A stretch of DNA of 64,000 nucleotides, taken from positions 62,001 to 126,000 of IMG/VR virus record IMGVR_UViG_3300005965_000002; one strand, written 5' to 3'. Position 1 is the stretch's first letter. Each line of letters starts with the position of its first letter. Below the pieces are notes generated by a model. It was not told the DNA's origin. It saw nothing but the letters and a program-made list of their open reading frames with translations, and did not search any database. Positions 26,821 through 60,253 of the stretch are shown one piece after another. Position numbers and translations under genes: made by a program.

Positions 26821-27219
26821 TTATTTTTTTAGATTGGTAATGTTCAGCCCGCTACCGCTGTATATTTTTGAGTGGTTATTTATGAAATCTACAGTTTCAG
26901 GGTCATCTAGATCTCCCCAGAAGCATAGATTGCGTAAAGGGCTCTGCACAATCATTTTTACCTCATCCATGTGGGGGAAATATGAGGAAAAGATAGTTAT
27001 TCCCCCCGGATCACCAAAAGTATACTCGGATCGGAAATACTCCTGTAGAGCTTCAAACATCGGAGACTCATCGTAACCGTGTATAATTTCATTACTTACG
27101 GTTAGGATGACGTGAGGCCGGTCTCCAGCGATAATAACTGCTTTAGATTCTCCTGATTCGCGTATTCTTCCGGATTCGTATACAAGTCTTGCAAAGTAAT
27201 TCCATCTCCGTTCATCCAT
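26821..27219 (-). CDS. Degenerate dCMP/cytidine deaminase-fold protein
   Basis: AVII..N..TIFSSYFPHMDEVKMIVQS matches the TLYxTxxPCxxCxKxIxQS pattern; HAE and PCxxC are absent. Confidence 0.55.
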   Translation of the reverse strand: MDERRWNYFARLVYESGRIRESGESKAVIIAGDRPHVILTVSNEIIHGYDESPMFEALQEYFRSEYTFGDPGGITIFSSYFPHMDEVKMIVQSPLRNLCFWGDLDDPETVDFINNHSKIYSGSGLNITNLKK

Positions 27220-30200
27220 CCTCTGATCCTTTCGTCGAACAGAGTGTTTCTTCTCTGTATCCGATCATTATTAATCGCTTGCTCTATAGCTGATCCTTGC
27301 CCTAAGACCACAACTTTTTTCTTGGCCCTTGTAATGGCGGTATACAAAAGATTTCTCTGAAGAATTCTCTGACCATGGGCGCGTACAATAGGCAGGATAA
27401 TCAAGGGATATTCTAAGCCCTGACTATTATGGGTTACATACCCATTCATCACATATGTATTATCGTGTTCTACCTCAATATCATACATATCTACTTCAGG
27501 TAATTTTTCTACTGATATTACTTTATCATAATTATAATCACTATTGTAATATGTGTTTTCAAACTTATAAAATAAGGAATTACCCTCATTGTGTCCTATT
27601 TGAGGATTTCTCAAAGCGCACAGGTAGTCGCCGTTTTTTATATTTCCCGCTTCTTTAAAGTAGATTCCAGAGGTATTGGCTACAAGGTGCCTATGCTCAA
27701 AACTAGAATCTACAAATGCTCCTGATTTAGTAGTAATTCTATAAACTTCCTTTTTCCCCACATGTACCTTGGATATTACCCTTTTTTTATTATTTTTACC
27801 TGTTAGCACTATATCACCTTTTTTTATGTCAGATAAAGGTATTATCCCTCGTTCAGTAAAGATTTTATTGTATCCAGGAGCGCATTTGTGTACACTTATT
27901 GCATAAGCTAATTTAAGCATATCATCCGCAAGCTTCATGGGGATTTCTACTCGTTTTGTTTTCCCATCAAACTCATCAATATCAATAACAATATTTCCTT
28001 CTACTATTAAAACGACCTTACCAATATCTCCATTAAATACATCTAGGTAGTAGTTGTTCTTTTTGATTAGTACCCGGTCGCCTTTTCGAATTATCATCCG
28101 GTTTAAAGAAACCTCTTTTTTGTTATCTGCTGGAGGGTTTAGCACACTCTGAAGCGCTACGTTAAGCGTTTCTACACTCAGAGGGCCATTATTCCTCGGG
28201 GTGATAATCTGGAAAAGCGTGGGTTCCTTTTTCTTTTTGTTTCCGTCCTTTATATGCTGAGCAAACCGTATGATTGTTTCTTCGATTGTTCCCATATTCT
28301 TTTCACGAAGGAACCATATATCAGCATGCTTATCTCTTTTAAATAGGGAAAGATCCGTATTGCCGTCTCTTATCCTTTTAGCGGCTTTGATGATGTCAGA
28401 CTGCTCTTCCTGCCGGAATATGGTTCTAAGCTGAATGACTTTAAAGCATGCGCAGCTAATTAAGTGCTTAAGTACGGTACCTGGGCCTACAGAAGGTAGC
28501 TGGTCATTATCCCCGACGAACACAATCTTTGTGTGGGAGAATAAGGCAGAAACCAGCCTGAAGAACACCTCCATATCAACCATGGAAGTCTCATCTACAA
28601 TGACTACCTTTGTATTGTACTTATTCAGAGCATGGTAGTCCCATTTATCTCCTTTATACCCTAGCTGTCTGTGTATCGTGCGTGCATCATAATTAGCCGT
28701 TTTAGCCAGCTTTTTAGCAGATATGCCGGTAGGTGTCAGTAGGTCAAAGCTTATATTCTTTCTCACCATGAGTTCTACAAGAGCTTTAACAATTGTTGTA
28801 TTGTGAGTTACTGTGAAATCTCCTAAAACAAATCGACCGTTTCCTGATATTTGAAACCCATAATATTTACCCTTTCCTATGCTTTTAATTTGTATCCCAG
28901 TAACTAGATTATCTTTAATTTGTTTTCTTTCCTCGGCTGTTTTTTTCTTAACCTTCGTTGGTATCTTACATAGACCATTACCAGAAATAGTAGCACGGTA
29001 ATAAGTGCCCTCTCCTGAATAGTATTTCCCTTTACTAAAGCATGAAAAGGATTTTTTGCATGGTTTAGGGTAAGCGCTGAATCCTAATGATCTAGCGATG
29101 AAAACTACATCGTTTAAAAGCTTTTCACTCTTAAATATTATGTCATAGCAGTTTCCTCTTTTATCATAAGATCCATCAGAATCGATTATACCAGCTAAAA
29201 GATTGAGTCTTATTTCTTCGCTGTTGGCCTTATATAAGTGGGGGACAGTTTTTGCTATTGTCAGCCCAGATTCTTGTAGATAATTCCAAAAAAAATTGGG
29301 CTTTCTTTTTCCCTTTAATTCTCCGTATGCTTTTGAATCCATATCACGGGATATGTGGTATTCAATATTATCTCCACTAACTTTTTTTATTGAAATTTCT
29401 GTCCCTCTTAGTATGGTATCGATAGCCTCAACTACTTCGGTAAACGGAGTACTTATTCTTGAGGCGTCTATAGCGCCGTTTCCTAACCACATACCGAGTA
29501 GGTATGGATGTATAGGTATATCTTTTGTTGGAAATTTAACAGGCACTCTGTACCCTTTTAGCCTTTCACGAAAGCTCTTGGCTAAAGAAAAATAAGTGTC
29601 TATGGATATATCGTGTATTTTTCCTTTACCTGACCCAGCATAGGTTGATTGCTTTAGAGAGAGAATATGAGACCTATTTACGACGTACTTATCTCCCTTT
29701 TTAGGAATAACTTCAAAAAGTTCTTCTTCCCCAGTCGCCGTGGAAAGAACTACCCTGGGGGTAGAGTCATCCCCCATCAGAACATCGTTTGTCTTTATAT
29801 CTTGAACTTCTTTAATTGTACCATCATACATTAGAACGGGTGTCCCGTAGCCTAAGCATTTACCTGTACCCGGGGAGCCTGTAATCACCATTACTTTTTC
29901 TTTTGTGAAAGATCTAATAGATTCTTTTTGATCCTCACTAAGATCCATGTGGTGGGCTTTTTCGTACTCGGATATAAATTCTTCTACGTTGAAATCCCCA
30001 AAATCGCACTCATCGTGCTTATCATAGATTTTCTTAAGTAGCCTGGCACTTTCATTTTCATAGAAAAACATGTTTATGTCGTAGTACCGGTTTTCGTCCT
30101 GGTAAATAAAGCCATCCTTTACCAGTCCTTCTATATGAGGCTCTATCTCAGAAAAAAGAACAACACCATTTTTGAATGGGTACTCAGAACTTTTATTGTA

Positions 30201-30920
30201 ATCATTGAATAGCTTGCTGATTTCAGCAGGCTGCAGGAACAGGTGTCCGGACTGCATACAGCTACGAAGCATAAAAAGGATAAAGTATCGGTATCTTAGC
30301 GGGTCCTGCGGAGATTTGCCTAGTTTGTGCGCCAGGTAATCGCAAGTGGTGAATCCGAATCCTTCAAAGCTTAAAAGATAGGGATTCTGCTTGATGACTA
30401 ATTCGGCATTGTAGCTATATTTCGATATGATTTTTTCTATTTTGAACTTAGAAAGCCCGAGGCTATGGAGGAATACTTTTACGGATTTTAACTCTTTATT
30501 TTCCTTCCACGCCTCAACAATATTTTCTACTATTTTTTCGCCTATACCCTCGATCTCAGTTAATCTTTCCGGGGTATTTTCAATGATATCTTCTATATCT
30601 TCTTTCTTAAAGTGCTCCGCTATGTCTCGGGCTCTTTCGGGTCCAATCCATTTTGCGATGGACTGTAAGTAGAGATAAATTCCCTGTAGTGAGTTATCGT
30701 GTGCGAAGGTATGGCTGAGAGCTTTGAATGTCATCCCGTATTTAGGGTGATTGAAGAAATCACCATGCACATCTACCATAGCGTTAGGTAGAAGATTTGG
30801 GAAAGAACCGGAAACCGAAATCCTAGCTCCGTCTTTCTGCGCAAGTATAAAAATTTTGAAGTCACCGTCTTGCGATTCAAATTTTATTTTGTTTACTTTT
30901 CCGGTGATAGTTTCCATCAT
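27102..30920 (-). CDS. recD2: RecD2-like SF1B helicase with two inteins
   Basis: HhH repeats, GSPGTGK|T, PTG.SA, TIHR, DETSM, VGD.DQLPSV, RQ, NGDIG, HK|SQG.EY, LLYTAITRAK. Confidence 0.93.
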   Translation of the reverse strand: MMETITGKVNKIKFESQDGDFKIFILAQKDGARISVSGSFPNLLPNAMVDVHGDFFNHPKYGMTFKALSHTFAHDNSLQGIYLYLQSIAKWIGPERARDIAEHFKKEDIEDIIENTPERLTEIEGIGEKIVENIVEAWKENKELKSVKVFLHSLGLSKFKIEKIISKYSYNAELVIKQNPYLLSFEGFGFTTCDYLAHKLGKSPQDPLRYRYFILFMLRSCMQSGHLFLQPAEISKLFNDYNKSSEYPFKNGVVLFSEIEPHIEGLVKDGFIYQDENRYYDINMFFYENESARLLKKIYDKHDECDFGDFNVEEFISEYEKAHHMDLSEDQKESIRSFTKEKVMVITGSPGTGKCLGYGTPVLMYDGTIKEVQDIKTNDVLMGDDSTPRVVLSTATGEEELFEVIPKKGDKYVVNRSHILSLKQSTYAGSGKGKIHDISIDTYFSLAKSFRERLKGYRVPVKFPTKDIPIHPYLLGMWLGNGAIDASRISTPFTEVVEAIDTILRGTEISIKKVSGDNIEYHISRDMDSKAYGELKGKRKPNFFWNYLQESGLTIAKTVPHLYKANSEEIRLNLLAGIIDSDGSYDKRGNCYDIIFKSEKLLNDVVFIARSLGFSAYPKPCKKSFSCFSKGKYYSGEGTYYRATISGNGLCKIPTKVKKKTAEERKQIKDNLVTGIQIKSIGKGKYYGFQISGNGRFVLGDFTVTHNTTIVKALVELMVRKNISFDLLTPTGISAKKLAKTANYDARTIHRQLGYKGDKWDYHALNKYNTKVVIVDETSMVDMEVFFRLVSALFSHTKIVFVGDNDQLPSVGPGTVLKHLISCACFKVIQLRTIFRQEEQSDIIKAAKRIRDGNTDLSLFKRDKHADIWFLREKNMGTIEETIIRFAQHIKDGNKKKKEPTLFQIITPRNNGPLSVETLNVALQSVLNPPADNKKEVSLNRMIIRKGDRVLIKKNNYYLDVFNGDIGKVVLIVEGNIVIDIDEFDGKTKRVEIPMKLADDMLKLAYAISVHKCAPGYNKIFTERGIIPLSDIKKGDIVLTGKNNKKRVISKVHVGKKEVYRITTKSGAFVDSSFEHRHLVANTSGIYFKEAGNIKNGDYLCALRNPQIGHNEGNSLFYKFENTYYNSDYNYDKVISVEKLPEVDMYDIEVEHDNTYVMNGYVTHNSQGLEYPLIILPIVRAHGQRILQRNLLYTAITRAKKKVVVLGQGSAIEQAINNDRIQRRNTLFDERIRGWMNGDGITLQDLYTNPEEYANQENLKQLLSLETGLTSS
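27426..27884 (-). mobile_element. Mini-intein (153 aa) in RecD2 motif V
   Basis: SVHK|CAPGYNKIFT...YVTHN|SQGLEY; no endonuclease. Confidence 0.92.
28800..29858 (-). mobile_element. LAGLIDADG intein (353 aa) in RecD2 Walker A
   Basis: GTGK|CLGYGTPVLM...VTHN|TTIV; LLGMWLGNG and LLAGIIDSDG. Confidence 0.95.
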
Positions 30921-31265: not shown

Positions 31266-31916
31266 TTAGTTCTGAATGTATTTACGATCAACGCGCACGA
31301 TGATATATTCACCAGGCTTGTACGTGGAGAATTTCATACCCTCACTGAATGCTTTTGCTGCATTAATTTCGAGGATTTCTACCCTGTCGCCCTCCCGTGT
31401 GGCAAACTTCGACGCAAAGTCGTTAGCCATCTCTGGAGTGTCATACAATTTGATGTACTTTTTTGTATGACTGCGTAGGCCTGTCTCCCGCATCCGACCT
31501 GCCAGGTTTTCCAGAGTACCAAAGTAAAGTGTATCAGGGGGTTGGACATACCGAACGATTTTGTACTTGATCTGGTTCTCCCCGTTGATGAGGATCTTCT
31601 GGTCTCTATCCTTGAAAAAGAACTCCACTACATGATTGTCATTGATGTAGTCAAGGTAAGGATGGAGGAAGACAACCACTTCTCTCATAGCCGGGATTGG
31701 TACGAATGCTTCTTGGTTATAAGGAAGCGAGTAGGATCTTCCTTCATTATCAAAAATCTCCAAGGAACCCGCGCAATTTTCACCATCACATTTGTCAGCT
31801 ACGCTCTTCAAAATATCAATAGAGCATAAAAGAGCTGTTTTGAGATCAGCGCTGCTTTTGAAAAGAGTTGGGGGTGACTTCTTAAACGGCGGTTTTTTGT
31901 TGTGATGCGGTATCAT
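31266..31916 (-). CDS. Degenerate RNA 2'-phosphotransferase (Tpt1/KptA)-like protein
   Basis: PPDTLYFGT..GL..KKYIKLY..ILEINA..GMKF..GEYI..V..KYI follows the KptA C-lobe pattern; start MIPHH has a GGAGG RBS. Confidence 0.7.
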   Translation of the reverse strand: MIPHHNKKPPFKKSPPTLFKSSADLKTALLCSIDILKSVADKCDGENCAGSLEIFDNEGRSYSLPYNQEAFVPIPAMREVVVFLHPYLDYINDNHVVEFFFKDRDQKILINGENQIKYKIVRYVQPPDTLYFGTLENLAGRMRETGLRSHTKKYIKLYDTPEMANDFASKFATREGDRVEILEINAAKAFSEGMKFSTYKPGEYIIVRVDRKYIQN

Positions 31917-31941
31917 TAACTTATCCTCCTGTGGTAGTTTA

Positions 31942-32373
31942 TTAGGATTCCGCTTTATTATTAGTATCACTACTAATGTTGGTTTCTTCTTCTTCTATTT
32001 CTTCTTCTTTTAGGGCTTCAGAGATATCAGATTCGGATAAAAGGACTTCTCTTTTAAGCAAACCAAATATCGTGGTATTTAGAAAACTGTTAACTACTCG
32101 GGTCTCTGTAAGAAGGTGCTGAATCATCTGGTTGATAGGAGATTCCTGATCCTTTAAAATATTCCTTACATTAGCCTTATCCCCATTAGCTAAACCAGAT
32201 AAAACTGTAGAGATATGCTCCATTGCTCGTACATTGAAGGAAATTTTCTTCTGAATAAAACCTTTCAGGTCTCGATTAATACCTTCCATGGAAAATGTAT
32301 AAGCTACTTCTTCTAACCGGCTATTATTCATTTCTTGATACTCTTGGAATTTCTTTTTGAGATCATCATTCAT
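31942..32373 (-). CDS. Hypothetical protein
   Basis: First ORF of the leftward block. Confidence 0.55.
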   Translation of the reverse strand: MNDDLKKKFQEYQEMNNSRLEEVAYTFSMEGINRDLKGFIQKKISFNVRAMEHISTVLSGLANGDKANVRNILKDQESPINQMIQHLLTETRVVNSFLNTTIFGLLKREVLLSESDISEALKEEEIEEEETNISSDTNNKAES

Positions 32374-32797
32374 ATTTTTAATCCTTAGGTGCAGTGATCA
32401 ACACTATGAATATACTGGTTTGCTCATTCTTTTTAAAGCGAATAAATGACATTTTTTGAGAAAATAAGAATATTTACTATTTTATAAACTGTATACTCGT
32501 TATTAATTATGACTTTTACCTTACCTAATAATTTACCAGAACCCAATATACTTTTTTAAATCATTACCTTACATATACTTTTTTAAAATTCAAAAAATAA
32601 AACCTATATATTAGTAATTATATTAATAATTACTCTTCTATTGTGTTTCCTCGAAGAGGAAATACAGTAGTAGCTATAAGAAATAAAGCTTAAACAGATG
32701 GCGACAAAAAATTAGAAAAAAGTTAGTAATGAGTAGATCTTACTTTAATTATGAAAATTTGATAAGTATATTGGAATAGATGTAAAGAAATCCAGGA
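32374..32797. promoter_or_regulatory. AT-rich divergent intergenic region at the strand switch (promoters, possible origin)
   Basis: Genes diverge here. Two ATATACTTTTTTAAA repeats, inverted repeat 32613-32634, hairpin 32638-32670, TTTGATAAGTATATTG at 32758. Confidence 0.6.
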
Positions 32798-33483
32798 GTG
32801 AATATGGGTCCTATTATAGTTATATCTGCTGATAAACTATCTCAATCAATGTTTTGTTCTTATTTATCCCAGATTTCCCTTATAGGGAAGGAAGTGGTAG
32901 TTAGAGATATAAATCTACTCTACTCCCCTGATGTTCAAGAGCAGATGATTGATGAATTTCTTACTCAGTTAGATAAAAGCCAACTATTGGTTGTTAAGTA
33001 TAAGATCAAAATAAATACTGATATGGATAAATTTAAGCTGCCGCCTAAAATACAGGATGCAGCATCTTATATTGTATTATTCGACATGTACTCCACCCAC
33101 CCTGAAGTATTAAAGGATACTCAGCAGTTTCCTAAGATACTTGATCGCTGGGAGGATTATATAAAAGGGCTCTCTTAGAGAGCTAACCCTCGTTTGAGAG
33201 AAGGTGAGCAAGGAGATAAGCAGCGGGATCGAGGCAGATTGACCGTGGTGGCTCCTGAAAATGCAAACCGGGCGGCTTATGAGGATTTTTAAAGGTCTTT
33301 TTAGGAAAAGGCCCCCTGCCGAAAGGCTGAGGAATTCTGCCAATAACTTACAGCCCGTAAATGCACGCGAAGCTGAGTGAGGCCCTGCCAGAAAGAAGCT
33401 TATAAATATCAAGCACTTAGGCAGGAAATAATACCAACTAAAGCCAAAACAGTAGTAGCCATCAGAAACAAAGCTTAAACAGA
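32664..33483 (+). repeat. 35-bp imperfect direct repeat (32664-32698 and 33449-33483)
   Basis: ACAGTAGTAGCTATAAGAAATAAAGCTTAAACAGA vs ACAGTAGTAGCCATCAGAAACAAAGCTTAAACAGA; 3 mismatches. Confidence 0.9.
32798..33178 (+). CDS. Hypothetical protein
   Basis: AGGAG RBS and promoter-like motif upstream. Confidence 0.6.
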   Translation: MNMGPIIVISADKLSQSMFCSYLSQISLIGKEVVVRDINLLYSPDVQEQMIDEFLTQLDKSQLLVVKYKIKINTDMDKFKLPPKIQDAASYIVLFDMYSTHPEVLKDTQQFPKILDRWEDYIKGLS

Positions 33484-33520
33484 AGAAACTCTGTTTCGGC
33501 GGGGTGCGTTAATCCCCTCG
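33169..33520 (+). ncRNA. Candidate structured non-coding RNA
   Basis: GC-elevated intergenic segment with many stems, including GCC-GAAA-GGC; family not recognised. Confidence 0.35.
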
Positions 33521-33549: not shown

Positions 33550-34563
33550 ATGTATTTCAAAGCCATTAAAGGCCATGGGGAAAATATTGCCCTGTTTAAA
33601 AAATGGGTGGTAGAAAACTCATTTGAAGGTGTTTATCTTTTTACAGGACCTAAAGGGGTAGGGAAATTTACAACGGCTCGCCAGCTCTGTAAATACATCC
33701 TGTGTACCGGAGTAAAAGATGATACCTGTCGCTGTGGAAGCTGTAAAATTTTTCCAGGCACCCCTGATTATCTGGAGATTAGTAAGGGTGGAGGAGAAAC
33801 TATTAAAGTTGCTGACGCAGAAAGCATAGACAATTTTACTAGTCTTCTTCCTTATAAAAGTAGAAAAAGGGTTGTGTTGATTGATGATGCAGAGAATCTA
33901 AACGTAAAAGCGGCTAATCGTCTACTAAAGGTGTTAGAAGATATAAAGAGCCATATGATTGTCATTTTGGTTTCTAGTAACCCGCATCTAATTCTCCCAA
34001 CTATTAAATCACGCACAACAGAAATTCCTTTCAGTCGCTTATCTGTGGAGGAATCTTTAGAGGTATTGAAGGATAGGGGCATGTCCGTTGGAAAAATTAA
34101 AGATATGTCCAAGGCTATACCATATTTGAGGGAAAGCATGCCTCGGGCAGGTCTTAAGTACTATGAGTATTATAAGTATGTACCCTCCTTCCTGGAGCTA
34201 ATGGTTTCTTCCAGTGAAGACGAAGTCTTGAGTGCTATTAAGAGTATAGAAGAAAATGAAAACATTTCTTATTTTGCCGAAATGTTAGTTGAGTACCTAT
34301 CTGACATGCTAAGGATAATGTACGATGCCGAGAACAACATACATTTTGATGCAAAGTTTAAGGAAATAGAGAAATTGACATTTTCTTGGAACGACGATCT
34401 ATGTATAGCATTTGCTAACCGCCTGCGAAACGCAATATCTGATTATGATCGAGGAATAAATTTGAAGTTGTATAATAGAGTACGCACAGCAGTATCCTGG
34501 GTTTACATTCTTCTCCAGAATCATTTGGGTAGGAAACAAAGTAAAGCCAAGGTTGCTCCATAG
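33550..34563 (+). CDS. holB: Clamp loader delta-prime subunit
   Basis: GPKGVGK, C-rich Zn module, IDDAENLN..AANRLLK.LE, LPTIKSR. Confidence 0.88.
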   Translation: MYFKAIKGHGENIALFKKWVVENSFEGVYLFTGPKGVGKFTTARQLCKYILCTGVKDDTCRCGSCKIFPGTPDYLEISKGGGETIKVADAESIDNFTSLLPYKSRKRVVLIDDAENLNVKAANRLLKVLEDIKSHMIVILVSSNPHLILPTIKSRTTEIPFSRLSVEESLEVLKDRGMSVGKIKDMSKAIPYLRESMPRAGLKYYEYYKYVPSFLELMVSSSEDEVLSAIKSIEENENISYFAEMLVEYLSDMLRIMYDAENNIHFDAKFKEIEKLTFSWNDDLCIAFANRLRNAISDYDRGINLKLYNRVRTAVSWVYILLQNHLGRKQSKAKVAP

Positions 34564-58684: not shown

Positions 58685-60253
58685 ATGGCAATGCCTAAGT
58701 ATGGACACGCTGTTGTCGTAGGACACAGTATTGATCCTGGAAGATGGATAGATAAGAAGGTTGCTCCCGGAAGGGTAAAAGTAGCAAAAAGAGTCATAGC
58801 TGATTATGACCCGTCTAGGTGGTTGCTTAGCCATGCTACTATTATTGCGTCTGTTGACGTTGATCAGAAGGATCCAAGTGATCCGAAAAGTAATTATCTG
58901 ATTAAGCCCGAATACTCCGTATTTGTTAATAATAACGGAGACTCCTGGGAAAGAGGCCTTCTTAAAAATTGTTACCACACCTTTATAGGTGCCGATAACT
59001 ACGTCGAGCACGTTCAGATTCCCGAGCTCTCTAAGGGAAAAATTATCGATGCCGCTATACGTGAGGTGCCTTTCGCTAAAGATTCCGAGGGTAATGATTT
59101 AACAACTCTCTACGTTGATATTCTTGTAGCTACCAGTTTAAAGCATAAAGACCTTGTGCAGAAGATTAAGACTGGGGACTATAATGCAATGTCAATGGGC
59201 TGCCTTATAGAATATTCTCAGTGTAGTAAGTGTGGTAATATAGCCAAGGATGAGACACAAGCATGTAAGCATATCCTCTATTTTAAGAAAAATTTCTTCT
59301 ACGATGAGGGAGGAAATAAGAGGATCATAGCTGAGCTTTGTGGTAGATCTGAAGATCCTGATAGTTGTAAGTTCATAGAAGGTAGCTGGGTTAAGAAACC
59401 CGCCTTCGAAGGAGCTCTTCTTAGGAATATTGTTAATCCTTCAGAAGGTATGGGTGAAAAGTTACAAAATGCTATAGCGGTCCCTTCTGCCGTTCCCACT
59501 ATGACTGACTTTTCAAAAGCCGCATCGTTAACTGCTGGTAATTTAGTACGCCAGATACAGGCCCAGGAAGAGGGTGAAGCACCTGCAGAAGCGCCAAAGG
59601 ATGATGCTGGTTTTCCTGAAGCTCCCGAAGGAGAGGGTGCTCCGTTAGAGCTGGATAAGCCCGGAGAAGAAGCCACCCCGGATGCGGGAGGAGCTGGAGG
59701 TGGTTTAGGTGGTGTACCTGCAGAAGGTCCCGGTGCTGAGCCTGTCGCTCCAGTCCCTGAAGGAGATGCTACTGTTAAGGAAGTTAAGGATCTCCTAAAG
59801 AAACATGTTTTACAAGAAATACGTGATGAATTAATACAGAAGAACTATAATGTAGAACCAAGAAATTTAGATGTTAATCCGGGCCTGGAAAATGATATGA
59901 ATGAGTCTCTAGTTAAAGAGGCAACATTCAAGAGGGTAATGGCTTCTGCAAAGAAATTAGGTAATGATAGATTAACAAACGGATTATTTATACTTACAAA
60001 TTTGAGGGATTGGAAAAGCCTAAAAAGATATGGTTATAGTCGAGAAGATGTAATAGGAATGATGCACTATATAGATAAAGTTGCTTCTAAAGAACCGCTT
60101 GATACTGATGTTGTAAAGGCTCTGGTTTCTATAAAGGAATCATCGGATTTAACAGATTTTTTTACTGAAATTATTGTAGAAACAGGTAAAGAATTAACCG
60201 CTAGCCAGGCAAAAAAGTTAGCTGGTTGGCGAAAAATATTGAAAAAAATATAA
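58685..60253 (+). CDS. Prohead (maturation) protease with Zn finger and acidic linker
   Basis: NNNGD, VEH..GKIIDA, AMSMG, CSKC..CKH, E.SWV..PA; lies between portal and scaffold. Confidence 0.72.
   Translation: MAMPKYGHAVVVGHSIDPGRWIDKKVAPGRVKVAKRVIADYDPSRWLLSHATIIASVDVDQKDPSDPKSNYLIKPEYSVFVNNNGDSWERGLLKNCYHTFIGADNYVEHVQIPELSKGKIIDAAIREVPFAKDSEGNDLTTLYVDILVATSLKHKDLVQKIKTGDYNAMSMGCLIEYSQCSKCGNIAKDETQACKHILYFKKNFFYDEGGNKRIIAELCGRSEDPDSCKFIEGSWVKKPAFEGALLRNIVNPSEGMGEKLQNAIAVPSAVPTMTDFSKAASLTAGNLVRQIQAQEEGEAPAEAPKDDAGFPEAPEGEGAPLELDKPGEEATPDAGGAGGGLGGVPAEGPGAEPVAPVPEGDATVKEVKDLLKKHVLQEIRDELIQKNYNVEPRNLDVNPGLENDMNESLVKEATFKRVMASAKKLGNDRLTNGLFILTNLRDWKSLKRYGYSREDVIGMMHYIDKVASKEPLDTDVVKALVSIKESSDLTDFFTEIIVETGKELTASQAKKLAGWRKILKKI

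What the first reader, a model, noticed from the sequence alone, without database searches (positions are those of the whole stretch)
33169..33520. Candidate novel ~350-nt structured RNA upstream of the clamp-loader operon
Seen: a GC-richer intergenic segment with stems GCTCTC/GAGAGC, ATAAGC/GCTTAT, GGCAGA/TCTGCC, GGTCTTTT/AAAAGGCC, GCC-GAAA-GGC, CCTGCC/GGCAGG, AAACAGA/TCTGTTT and GGGG/CCCC. The first long-range pairs interleave, suggesting a pseudoknot or alternative folds. The size, the internal short ORF ending Ala-stop and the TTTCGG-C-GGGG..CCCC end loosely recall tmRNA, but the canonical ends are missing.
Basis: partly seen in the sequence, partly recalled or inferred. Interest (0 to 1): 0.6.

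Follow-up and report, generated by a model that had tools for sequence, protein, structure and literature searches.

The report
New phage RNA with matched flanking repeats
The flagged stretch is a real, previously undescribed structured RNA gene of a huge phage; it always travels with a small unknown protein gene, sits where the genes switch direction (perhaps the replication origin), and carries a tail whose sequence is copied exactly a second time just upstream of the pair.

Summary
Window 33186-33520 (+) encodes a structured RNA, and homologous elements occur in more than 20 metagenomic huge-phage contigs. Ten or more helices covary: 87-92% of cells are paired against about 40% in slid controls. 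A model built without the window's lineage finds window 33287-33386. Rfam 15 and ARAGORN find nothing, and there is no tRNA-like domain, so it is not tmRNA.

The RNA is not tied to the clamp loader. It always follows a roughly 125-aa gene of a new family with a minimal P-loop/RecA-like fold. This holds where the next gene is ParB (L006) and by gene layout where it is Cpn10 (JGI record without DNA; L009 carries the RNA before Cpn10). The pair always sits at the point of divergent transcription. In the window this coincides with the local GC-skew minimum and a 22%-GC region.

The unexpected feature is a repeat. In 21 of 21 loci examined, a locus-specific 22-66-nt sequence S (89-100% identical within a locus, different between loci, sharp edges) occurs twice. 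One copy lies upstream of the protein gene (window 32661-32698). The other forms the RNA's weakly structured tail (33446-33483).

My best reading, at modest confidence, is an origin-associated RNA, probably with the 125-aa protein, that acts through S by pairing with the upstream DNA copy. Function is untested. I judge it novel and interesting.

The parts
32409..32437 (-). Promoter-like site for the leftward operon (TTTAA-N19-TATATT class).
   Evidence: 8 matches of this class in the window against 0.99 expected, most of them just upstream of ORF starts or in gaps between ORFs (compare). This one lies about 30 nt upstream of the ATG at 32373 (-).
32450..32645 (.). AT-rich spacer (GC 0.22) with short direct repeats, lying between the divergent promoters. 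Local GC-skew sign change and gene-strand switch. Putative origin region (inferred).
   Evidence: Relatives carry tandem hexamer arrays at the same place: L007 (ATACTC)x9, and L017 (CCTATT)x4.
32646..32662 (.). Perfect palindrome TTTCCTC-GAA-GAGGAAA directly before S1.
   Evidence: Read. Nine loci show a perfect 4-7-bp palindrome with a 3-5-nt loop (3 nt in eight of them), a different stem sequence and no G-U pair directly before S1.
32661..32698 (+). S1, the upstream copy of the locus-specific repeat S.
   Evidence: 34/38 identical to 33446-33483. These are the only two copies in the 258-kb record, on either strand, at up to 9 mismatches.
32744..32772 (+). Conserved promoter-like site of the 125-aa gene (TTTAAT-N17-TATATT).
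   Evidence: The TATATT block is nearly invariant in 13 loci.
32804..33178 (+). Gene for a 124-aa protein. The ORF is listed from GTG 32798; ATG 32804 follows an AGGAG. New family with a minimal P-loop/RecA-like fold.
33169..33183 (+). H0 hairpin over the stop codon TAG of the 124-aa gene.
   Evidence: kept with changed stem letters in L003.
33188..33284 (+). RNA 5' domain. H1 33188-92/33280-84; H2 33203-09/33263-69; H3 33211-15/33252-56; H4 33220-30/33237-49.
   Evidence: H3/H4 are 100% paired in 4 sequences, with 6 pairs changed on both sides. H1 has two compensatory double changes between window and L003 (read). H2 is weak, with 5 Watson-Crick pairs around a 2x2 mismatch.
33287..33386 (+). 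RNA core. H6 33294-301/33306-13 (loop UAGG); H7 33314-20/33325-32 (GAAA); H8 33339-41/33381-83; H9 33351-54/33372-75.
   Evidence: model R1, built without this lineage, matches here at 23.8 bits, E 3.9e-4 in 164 kb; 92% paired, with 20 of 24 pairs changed on both sides.
33384..33425 (+). H10, a variable-length hairpin arm (CCUGCC/GGCAGG).
   Evidence: helix 9: 94% paired and all 5 pairs changed on both sides. It is a 21-bp perfect hairpin in L031.
33426..33445 (+). Linker holding the counterpart of the conserved GACUAAAUG motif (AAAUAAU here).
33446..33483 (+). S2, the copy of S that forms the weakly structured tail of the RNA.
33477..33520 (+). H11 (33477-83/33490-96) and H12 (33501-04/33514-17), hairpins closing the RNA.
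   Evidence: Relatives have GC-rich hairpins here, several with UUCG/UACG loops.

Best explanation
Shown. Window 33186-33520 (+) is a gene for a structured non-coding RNA of about 340 nt. It has a 5' domain (H1-H4), a conserved core (H6-H9), a variable arm (H10), a weakly structured tail S (33446-33483) and two closing hairpins. Together with the 124-aa gene directly upstream it forms a two-gene cassette. That cassette is conserved in a clade of huge phages and always lies at the point where leftward and rightward genes diverge. The tail S is repeated, nearly letter for letter and in the same orientation, upstream of the cassette (S1, 32661-32698), next to a perfect palindrome and an AT-rich, repeat-bearing spacer. 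S differs freely between phages but stays matched within each phage.

Inferred. The only recognition that can demand identity over 22-66 nt of arbitrary sequence is base pairing. The RNA therefore most likely acts through S by pairing with the complementary DNA strand of S1, and in cis with that of S2. This would form an R-loop beside the unwinding-prone spacer. The loop would either prime or license replication there, or control the cassette's own promoter. The 300-nt scaffold would hold the RNA, and the small P-loop/RecA-fold protein would act as its partner, possibly helping strand invasion. Selection for pairing, or overwriting of S1 from the RNA, would keep the two copies matched while they drift.
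For: - Structure: 61 pairs in 9 helices, 87% paired against 35-46% when slid, 42 pairs changed on both sides, 0 of 500 shuffles reaching the observed value. The core reaches 92% paired across 19 sequences, including the window. The window-type arm is 100% paired. Frequent G-U pairs place the structure on the + strand RNA.
- No known family.
- Cassette: the ~125-aa gene plus a 380-635-nt gap occurs in every locus. In two loci an extra ORF sits inside the cassette (L034; L045, a called 177-aa gene). The protein family has 117 clusters among 1.84 billion representatives, nearly all 75-165 aa and with no sign of fusion.
- Repeat S: in 21 of 21 loci examined, a pair of direct repeats of 22-66 nt at 89-100% identity flanks the cassette, with sequences that differ between loci. 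Edges are sharp and flanks unrelated. No third copy was found on either strand in 258 kb or 52 kb. S is predicted to be weakly structured.
- Place: strand switch, local cumulative GC-skew minimum and 22% GC. Tandem short repeats upstream of S1. The replication genes on both sides are a RecD2-like helicase, the clamp loader and a primase. The cassette stays at the divergence point when the downstream gene changes.
- Protein fold: pLDDT 90; the best matches are RecA/RadA/DnaB-type cores and small P-loop kinases, at Z 6-7.8.
Against: - No transcript, R-loop or origin was measured.
- GC skew in phages follows transcription direction, so the origin assignment is only an inference.
- S is not at the very 3' end of the predicted RNA, because hairpins follow it. 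A primer role would therefore need processing.
- Nothing explains the large conserved scaffold.
- The fold match of the protein is generic (Z below 8), and its Walker A site is not canonical (S-x-D-K-[LI]-[ST]).
- Frequent recombination between nearby direct repeats could keep them identical without any pairing function.
- In most lineages S is purine-rich with a three-base rhythm and lies in frame with an upstream AUG/AUA/AUC. This could point to translation instead.
Confidence: 0.3

Rival explanations
1. Ribonucleoprotein with mimicry. The RNA is the partner of the 124-aa protein, or of a host RNA-binding protein such as Hfq that binds A-R-N triplets. S is the protein's binding platform. S1, transcribed from a weak upstream promoter, is a competing copy used for feedback or as a second small RNA.
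For: The gene and the RNA are strictly co-inherited. S is purine-rich with an (AGN)n rhythm in many loci. A promoter-like site lies upstream of S1 in the window (32582-32612, with a non-ideal spacer of 20) and in L023.
Against: A protein site does not need 22-66 nt of exact identity with sharp edges. S has no universal motif or composition; in L045, L046 and L006 it is not AGN-like. No RNA-binding fold was recognised in the protein.
Confidence: 0.2
2. Recombination module. S1 and S2 are substrates for homologous or site-specific recombination that loops the cassette out as a circle, or amplifies it, or they are att-like scars of a mobile cassette. Ongoing exchange keeps them identical.
For: Direct repeats with sharp edges flank the cassette in every locus, also when it holds an extra ORF (L034; L045). 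L033 carries three copies. The protein has a RecA-like fold.
Against: No integrase or transposase lies in or near the cassette. The cassette has the same position and similar divergence as the neighbouring replication genes, so it looks old and vertically inherited. Old neutral repeats should decay or delete the cassette. No relative with an empty site was seen.
Confidence: 0.15
3. Messenger-like RNA. The scaffold recruits ribosomes without a Shine-Dalgarno site, in the manner of tmRNA or an IRES, and S encodes a short peptide.
For: The frame is open from the conserved UAA-AUG motif through S for 12-35 codons in most loci. The AUG (or AUA/AUC) is in frame with S in about 9 lineages. Indels among L007, L025 and L027 come in threes. 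The stop often lies in a hairpin loop, as in tmRNA (read).
Against: In L016 and L017 an in-frame UGA lies between the AUG and S, and L016 uses the standard code. L014 stops after 6 codons. An (AGN)n rhythm gives an open frame by itself. The peptide is not conserved. S1 cannot be translated in the same way. There is no tRNA-like domain and no SmpB.
Confidence: 0.08
4. Cis-acting leader (riboswitch or attenuator) of the clamp-loader operon.
For: In the window and many relatives the element lies directly upstream of the clamp-loader genes.
Against: The downstream gene is ParB in L006 and the P0014 contig, and Cpn10 in L009. A promoter-like site lies ahead of the RNA in several relatives. At about 340 nt with 10 or more helices it is far larger than known leaders.
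Confidence: 0.04

Closest known systems
Origin R-loop / primer RNAs (ColE1 RNA II; phage T4 oriF/oriG transcripts; herpesvirus oriLyt RNAs). This comparison rests on my own knowledge.
   Same: A long structured transcript lies beside an AT-rich origin-like region inside a replication gene cluster. Part of it could hybridise to DNA.
   Different: Those RNAs hybridise in cis where they are made. None has a second, exactly matched DNA copy of its hybridising part 0.8-1.3 kb upstream, and none has a dedicated small partner gene. There is no sequence or structure similarity (Rfam negative).
tmRNA (Rfam RF00023 and the permuted families)
   Same: Similar size. A structured body is followed by an unstructured, ORF-like stretch ending in or near a hairpin. 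Huge phages are known to carry tmRNAs (PMC7162821, found).
   Different: No acceptor stem, T-arm or CCA; ARAGORN and Rfam are negative. No SmpB. The ORF is not universal. The tail is duplicated upstream.
Iteron replicons with the initiator gene between two repeat arrays (P1 incC-repA-incA, F ori2-repE-incC). This comparison rests on my own knowledge.
   Same: A small gene at an origin-like site is bracketed by matched direct repeats whose sequence is lineage-specific.
   Different: Iterons are arrays of about 19-22-bp protein sites. Here there is one long copy on each side, with no universal motif, and one of the two copies is part of an RNA gene.
Diversity-generating retroelements (VR - avd - TR - RT). 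This comparison rests on my own knowledge.
   Same: Two near-identical repeats bracket a small (~125-aa) accessory gene. One repeat lies in a structured RNA, and a hairpin lies next to the upstream copy.
   Different: No reverse transcriptase was found at the locus. The differences between S1 and S2 are not at adenines. S1 is not inside a target gene.

Membership tests
tmRNA | tRNA-like domain: acceptor stem formed by the 5' and 3' ends, T-arm, 3' CCA, G-U identity pair. | tested here: not met
   ARAGORN finds 0 genes, including permuted forms. No tmRNA family matches at E up to 10. H1 pairs the 5' end with the middle of the RNA and has no conserved G-U at a fixed position.
tmRNA | Tag reading frame with a conserved hydrophobic/Ala-rich end. 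| tested here: inconclusive
   The frame is open in most loci but interrupted by UGA in L016 and L017 and by UAA in L014. The ends are not conserved.
tmRNA | SmpB partner. | tested here: not met
   The neighbouring protein has an alpha/beta P-loop-like fold and gives no Pfam, NCBIfam or PHROG hit.
Any Rfam 15 family (group I/II introns, RNase P, SRP, 6S, GOLLD, ROOL, HEARO, riboswitches) | Score at or near the family's gathering threshold. | tested here: not met
   0 matches at gathering score in 64 kb. Only chance-level rows appear in the E-value scans of the window region and of L007.
Origin primer / R-loop RNA | Lies at a replication origin. | tested here: inconclusive
   The strand switch, local GC-skew minimum, 22% GC and short tandem repeats fit an origin. 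Skew is confounded by transcription direction, and no origin was mapped.
Origin primer / R-loop RNA | Forms a persistent RNA-DNA hybrid that is processed into a primer. | not testable with these tools
Diversity-generating retroelement | Reverse transcriptase next to the template repeat, with adenine-specific differences between the repeats. | tested here: not met
   No RT domain among the neighbours. Differences between S1 and S2 are mostly C/T and not at adenines of one copy.
Integrated mobile element with att sites | Integrase or transposase within the repeat-bounded segment. | tested here: not met
   The segment holds the ~125-aa gene and the RNA, plus one extra ORF in L034 and L045 that I did not scan. 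The 125-aa protein has no recombinase fold.
Cis-regulatory leader of the clamp-loader operon | Constant association with the regulated gene. | tested here: not met
   ParB or Cpn10 follows the RNA in some lineages.

The most novel reading that the evidence does not exclude
A programmable RNA-guided step at a phage replication origin. A structured RNA carries a freely evolving 22-66-nt 'address' that pairs with a matching DNA site beside the unwinding region, helped by a minimal RecA-fold protein, to prime or license replication. The DNA copy may even be rewritten from the RNA, which would explain the exact identity and the sharp edges.
Probability: 0.18. Interest if true: 0.9.

Novelty: categorically new. 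Interest (0 to 1): 0.75.

Why it matters
Huge phages are known mostly from metagenomes, and how they start replication is largely unknown. This locus offers three things. It adds a large, well-supported new RNA class, with 10 or more covarying helices and no Rfam relative. It defines a new small protein family found only next to that RNA. It shows a sequence that is free to change between phages but must stay matched between an RNA tail and a DNA site. That behaviour is typical of guide-target systems. If the tail does address DNA at the origin, this would be a new way of defining or controlling an origin, and possibly a compact programmable RNA-DNA recognition module. Even if the function turns out to be different, the cassette marks the strand-switch region in this phage clade and is directly testable.

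Tried and rejected
- Single-sequence folding is not significant.
- An alternative genetic code that would turn the gap into coding sequence is rejected. Table 11 already gives 91% coverage. Reading TAG through adds only 38 codons.
- The minus-strand 100-aa ORF is not conserved.
- Phage database blastn found no match. A 18-nt exact pattern in IMG/VR found none. The clamp-loader peptide scan in IMG/VR found none.
- A pattern scan with the conserved H3/H4 motif gave one true locus (L036). One of the other six hits (L038) proved to be a chance match inside a helicase-like gene; L037 and L039-L042 showed no flanking repeat and were not inspected further.
- Model R2, built for the 5' domain of the commonest subtype, finds 8 untrained loci but not the window's lineage. 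The window's 5' domain is therefore supported only by a 4-sequence alignment and by hand.
- Searching the window's own genome with R1 returned nothing, not even the known copy, so it is uninformative.
- MAFFT plus RNAalifold across subtypes fails to recover the helices.
- The pairs GGCAGA/TCTGCC and ATAAGC/GCTTAT are rejected.
- A possible closing helix UAUUUA/UAAAUG is invariant, so it cannot be tested.
- S as a protein-binding motif array (NCWGWA at about 12-nt spacing) is present in some loci and absent in others.
- The Python box was lost, so no scripts were possible after that.
- Whole-record searches for a third copy of S in L016 and L030 were not possible.
- No complex prediction was run, because no protein-protein claim is made.

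Full report
**Setting.** The window is bases 62001-126000 of a 258,580-bp IMG/VR virus record. CheckV estimates it as about 55% complete, which implies a genome of roughly 0.45 Mb. GC is 38.6%. Table 11 fits, with ORFs of 450 nt or more covering 91%. The finding lies between an ORF at 32798-33178 (+) and the clamp-loader delta' gene at 33550-34563 (+), which is followed by delta (holA). To the left, on the minus strand, are three further genes:
- a 143-aa ORF;
- a Tpt1/KptA-like RNA 2'-phosphotransferase homologue;
- a RecD2-like helicase carrying two inteins.

- The segment is GC-richer than its surroundings (0.52).
- Folding the single sequence is not better than shuffles (z = -1.4 and -0.9).
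- ARAGORN finds no tRNA or tmRNA in the window.
- Rfam 15 finds nothing at gathering scores and only chance-level rows at E up to 10.

On its own, then, the sequence proves nothing.

**Relatives.** The clamp-loader protein has relatives at 37-73% identity in metagenome assemblies. Their contigs show the same layout: a 122-130-aa gene, then an uncalled gap of 380-490 nt.
- In the closest relative, whose proteins are 65-73% identical, much of the gap is almost letter-identical. The changes that do occur keep stems and alter loops.
- In L006 and a sister contig the gap is followed by ParB.
- In a JGI record without DNA the gap is followed by Cpn10. L009, which begins inside the RNA, carries the RNA ahead of Cpn10.

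The element therefore belongs with the small upstream gene, not with the clamp loader. A scan of JGI metagenomes with the small protein gave 22 further loci. One more came from IMG/VR.

**Structure.** I worked on 12 sequences of the commonest subtype with nine helices, three placed by eye and six by RNAalifold. The counts come:
- 87.1% of 668 cells are standard pairs, against 35-46% when the 3' partners are slid by 1-3 columns.
- 42 of 61 pairs show changes on both sides.
- None of 500 shuffles reaches the observed values.

G-U pairs are common, so the structure belongs to the + strand RNA. I then built a covariance model of the core (H6-H9) from eight sequences of that subtype only. It recovers the window's element at 33287-33386 (23.8 bits, E 3.9e-4 in 164 kb) and also L003, L006, L009 and L015. 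On the resulting 19-row alignment, 92.3% of cells pair and 20 of 24 pairs change on both sides. That alignment is fitted to the model, so it leans towards the structure.

A model of the 5' domain finds eight untrained loci but not the window's lineage. For that lineage the evidence is:
- The H3/H4 arm is 100% paired in four sequences, with six double changes.
- H1 shows two compensatory double changes between the window and L003.

No conserved ORF exists in the scaffold on either strand. The RNA is therefore real. Its helices in window coordinates are listed under 'parts'. The two interleaved long-range pairs are not.

**The partner gene.** The 124-aa protein has no Pfam (above threshold), PHROG or NCBIfam match.
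- A profile of 21 members finds only 117 clusters among 1.84 billion representatives. Nearly all are 75-165 aa, and apart from one repetitive 1195-aa sequence that matches only the first 23 profile positions, none is fused to another domain.
- AlphaFold gives a confident five-stranded alpha/beta fold (pLDDT 90).
- Fold searches return only generic P-loop and RecA/RadA/DnaB/KaiC-type cores, at Z up to 7.8 and TM about 0.5-0.6.
- The conserved motif after strand 1 is S-x-D-K-[LI]-[ST]-x-S-M-F. A hhhFD motif ends strand 4. This recalls Walker A and B motifs but is not canonical.

**The repeat.** A 38-nt stretch of the RNA tail (33446-33483) recurs at 32661-32698, with 34 of 38 letters identical. 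These are the only two copies in the record. The same holds in every locus with enough flank. In 18 of 18 first tested, then in L036, and then in the two most distant members of the protein family (L045, L046), a pair of direct repeats of 22-66 nt at 89-100% identity brackets the gene plus the RNA.
- The sequence of S differs between loci, even where the scaffold is about 90% alike.
- The blocks have sharp edges and unrelated flanks.
- S still brackets the cassette when an extra ORF is present: an 84-aa ORF in L034 and a called 177-aa gene in L045.
- L033 has a duplicated upstream copy.
- S1 is always preceded by a perfect short palindrome whose stem letters vary and which never uses G-U pairs. 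This suggests a DNA-level element.
- S2 follows the conserved motif GACUAAAUG and is followed by stable hairpins.
- S itself is predicted to be weakly structured.

**Is S a reading frame?** In many loci S is purine-rich with an (AGN)n rhythm. It is open in the frame of the upstream AUG (AUA or AUC in some loci), and indels between close relatives come in threes. However:
- L016 and L017 have an in-frame UGA between the AUG and S, and L016 uses the standard code.
- L014 stops after six codons.
- The (AGN)n rhythm makes one frame open by itself.
- In L045, L046 and L006, S lacks that composition.

I therefore treat translation as a minor rival.

**Place in the genome.**
- A promoter-like motif, TTTAA-N17-19-TATATT, occurs 8 times in the window against 1 expected. 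Most copies lie just upstream of ORF starts or in gaps between ORFs.
- One copy drives the leftward operon (32437-32409) and one drives the 124-aa gene (32744-32772). The latter is conserved in 13 loci.
- In several relatives a promoter-like sequence of this type lies directly ahead of the RNA (L029 D2; read).
- Between the divergent promoters lies a 22%-GC spacer with short repeats, followed by the palindrome and S1.
- Genes point left for about 20 kb and right for about 30 kb from this point, and the window's cumulative GC skew has its minimum there.
- Relatives have tandem hexamer arrays at the same place.

All this fits an origin of bidirectional replication. Skew follows transcription in phages, though, and nothing was mapped.

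**Interpretation.** Three things are shown: a new structured RNA, its fixed partnership with a new small protein, and a matched repeat that evolves fast between phages but in concert within each. The mechanism is inferred. Identity over arbitrary sequence points to base pairing or to recombination. No complementary copy exists in the DNA at hand. The available partner is therefore the bottom strand of S1 DNA, and of S2 in cis. This would give an R-loop next to an easily unwound spacer inside a replication gene cluster. I rank this origin-associated, guide-like reading first (about 0.3). After it come an RNP with a mimic site (0.2), a recombination or excision module (0.15), a messenger-like RNA (0.08) and a leader of the clamp-loader operon (0.04). 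The closest known analogues work in cis and lack the matched upstream copy and the partner gene. These are ColE1 RNA II, T4 origin transcripts and oriLyt RNAs, cited from my own knowledge. tmRNA membership fails on its defining tRNA-like domain.

**Limits.**
- The Python box was lost.
- Alignments across subtypes are partly made by hand.
- The loci are related, so the shuffle controls overstate independence. The slid controls are the fairer comparison.

Noticed in passing
window 27102-30920 (-): The RecD2-like helicase (1272 aa) carries two inteins. One has Hint plus LAGLIDADG homing-endonuclease domains at about residues 355-620, and a second splicing domain lies at about 1044-1165. Relatives of 763-789 aa lack them.
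   Followed up: partly
window 31266-31970 (-): A Tpt1/KptA-like RNA 2'-phosphotransferase homologue (NCBIfam E 3.6e-11 over the C-terminal half) is conserved two genes to the left of the cassette in relatives. This hints at an RNA end-processing or ligation pathway near the RNA gene.
   Followed up: partly
window 4630, 5787, 5860, 19575, 26783, 32409, 32744, 37189: The promoter-like motif TTTAA-N17-19-TATATT occurs 8 times against 1 expected, mostly just upstream of ORF starts or in gaps between ORFs. It is probably the phage's own or host early promoter class.
   Followed up: partly
L034 1859-2113; L045 3034-3567: In two relatives an extra ORF sits inside the repeat-bounded cassette, between the 125-aa gene and the RNA: 84 aa in L034 and a called 177-aa gene in L045. 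Neither was scanned. The L045 ORF may overlap the RNA.
   Followed up: no
L033 1634-1902: A tandem 151-nt duplication upstream of the cassette gives two S1 copies, so this locus has three copies of S in all.
   Followed up: no
L007 1979-2106; L027 252-383: Two tandem copies of a ~41-44-nt promoter-like unit (GATGTTTAAA...TTTATGTT) lie between S1 and the 125-aa gene.
   Followed up: no
G000 bases 144300-150200 (outside the window) and window 59560-59759: There is a cluster of the genome's highest GC peaks (0.53-0.62 in 200-nt windows). Rfam found nothing in the part that lies in the window. The rest was not examined.
   Followed up: no
L007 2852-2860 with 2960-2968 (also L025): The conserved start of S (GAAACCAC) can pair with GUGGGUUUC just upstream of the clamp-loader ribosome site. 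The pairing is absent in L027, so it is probably not general.
   Followed up: no
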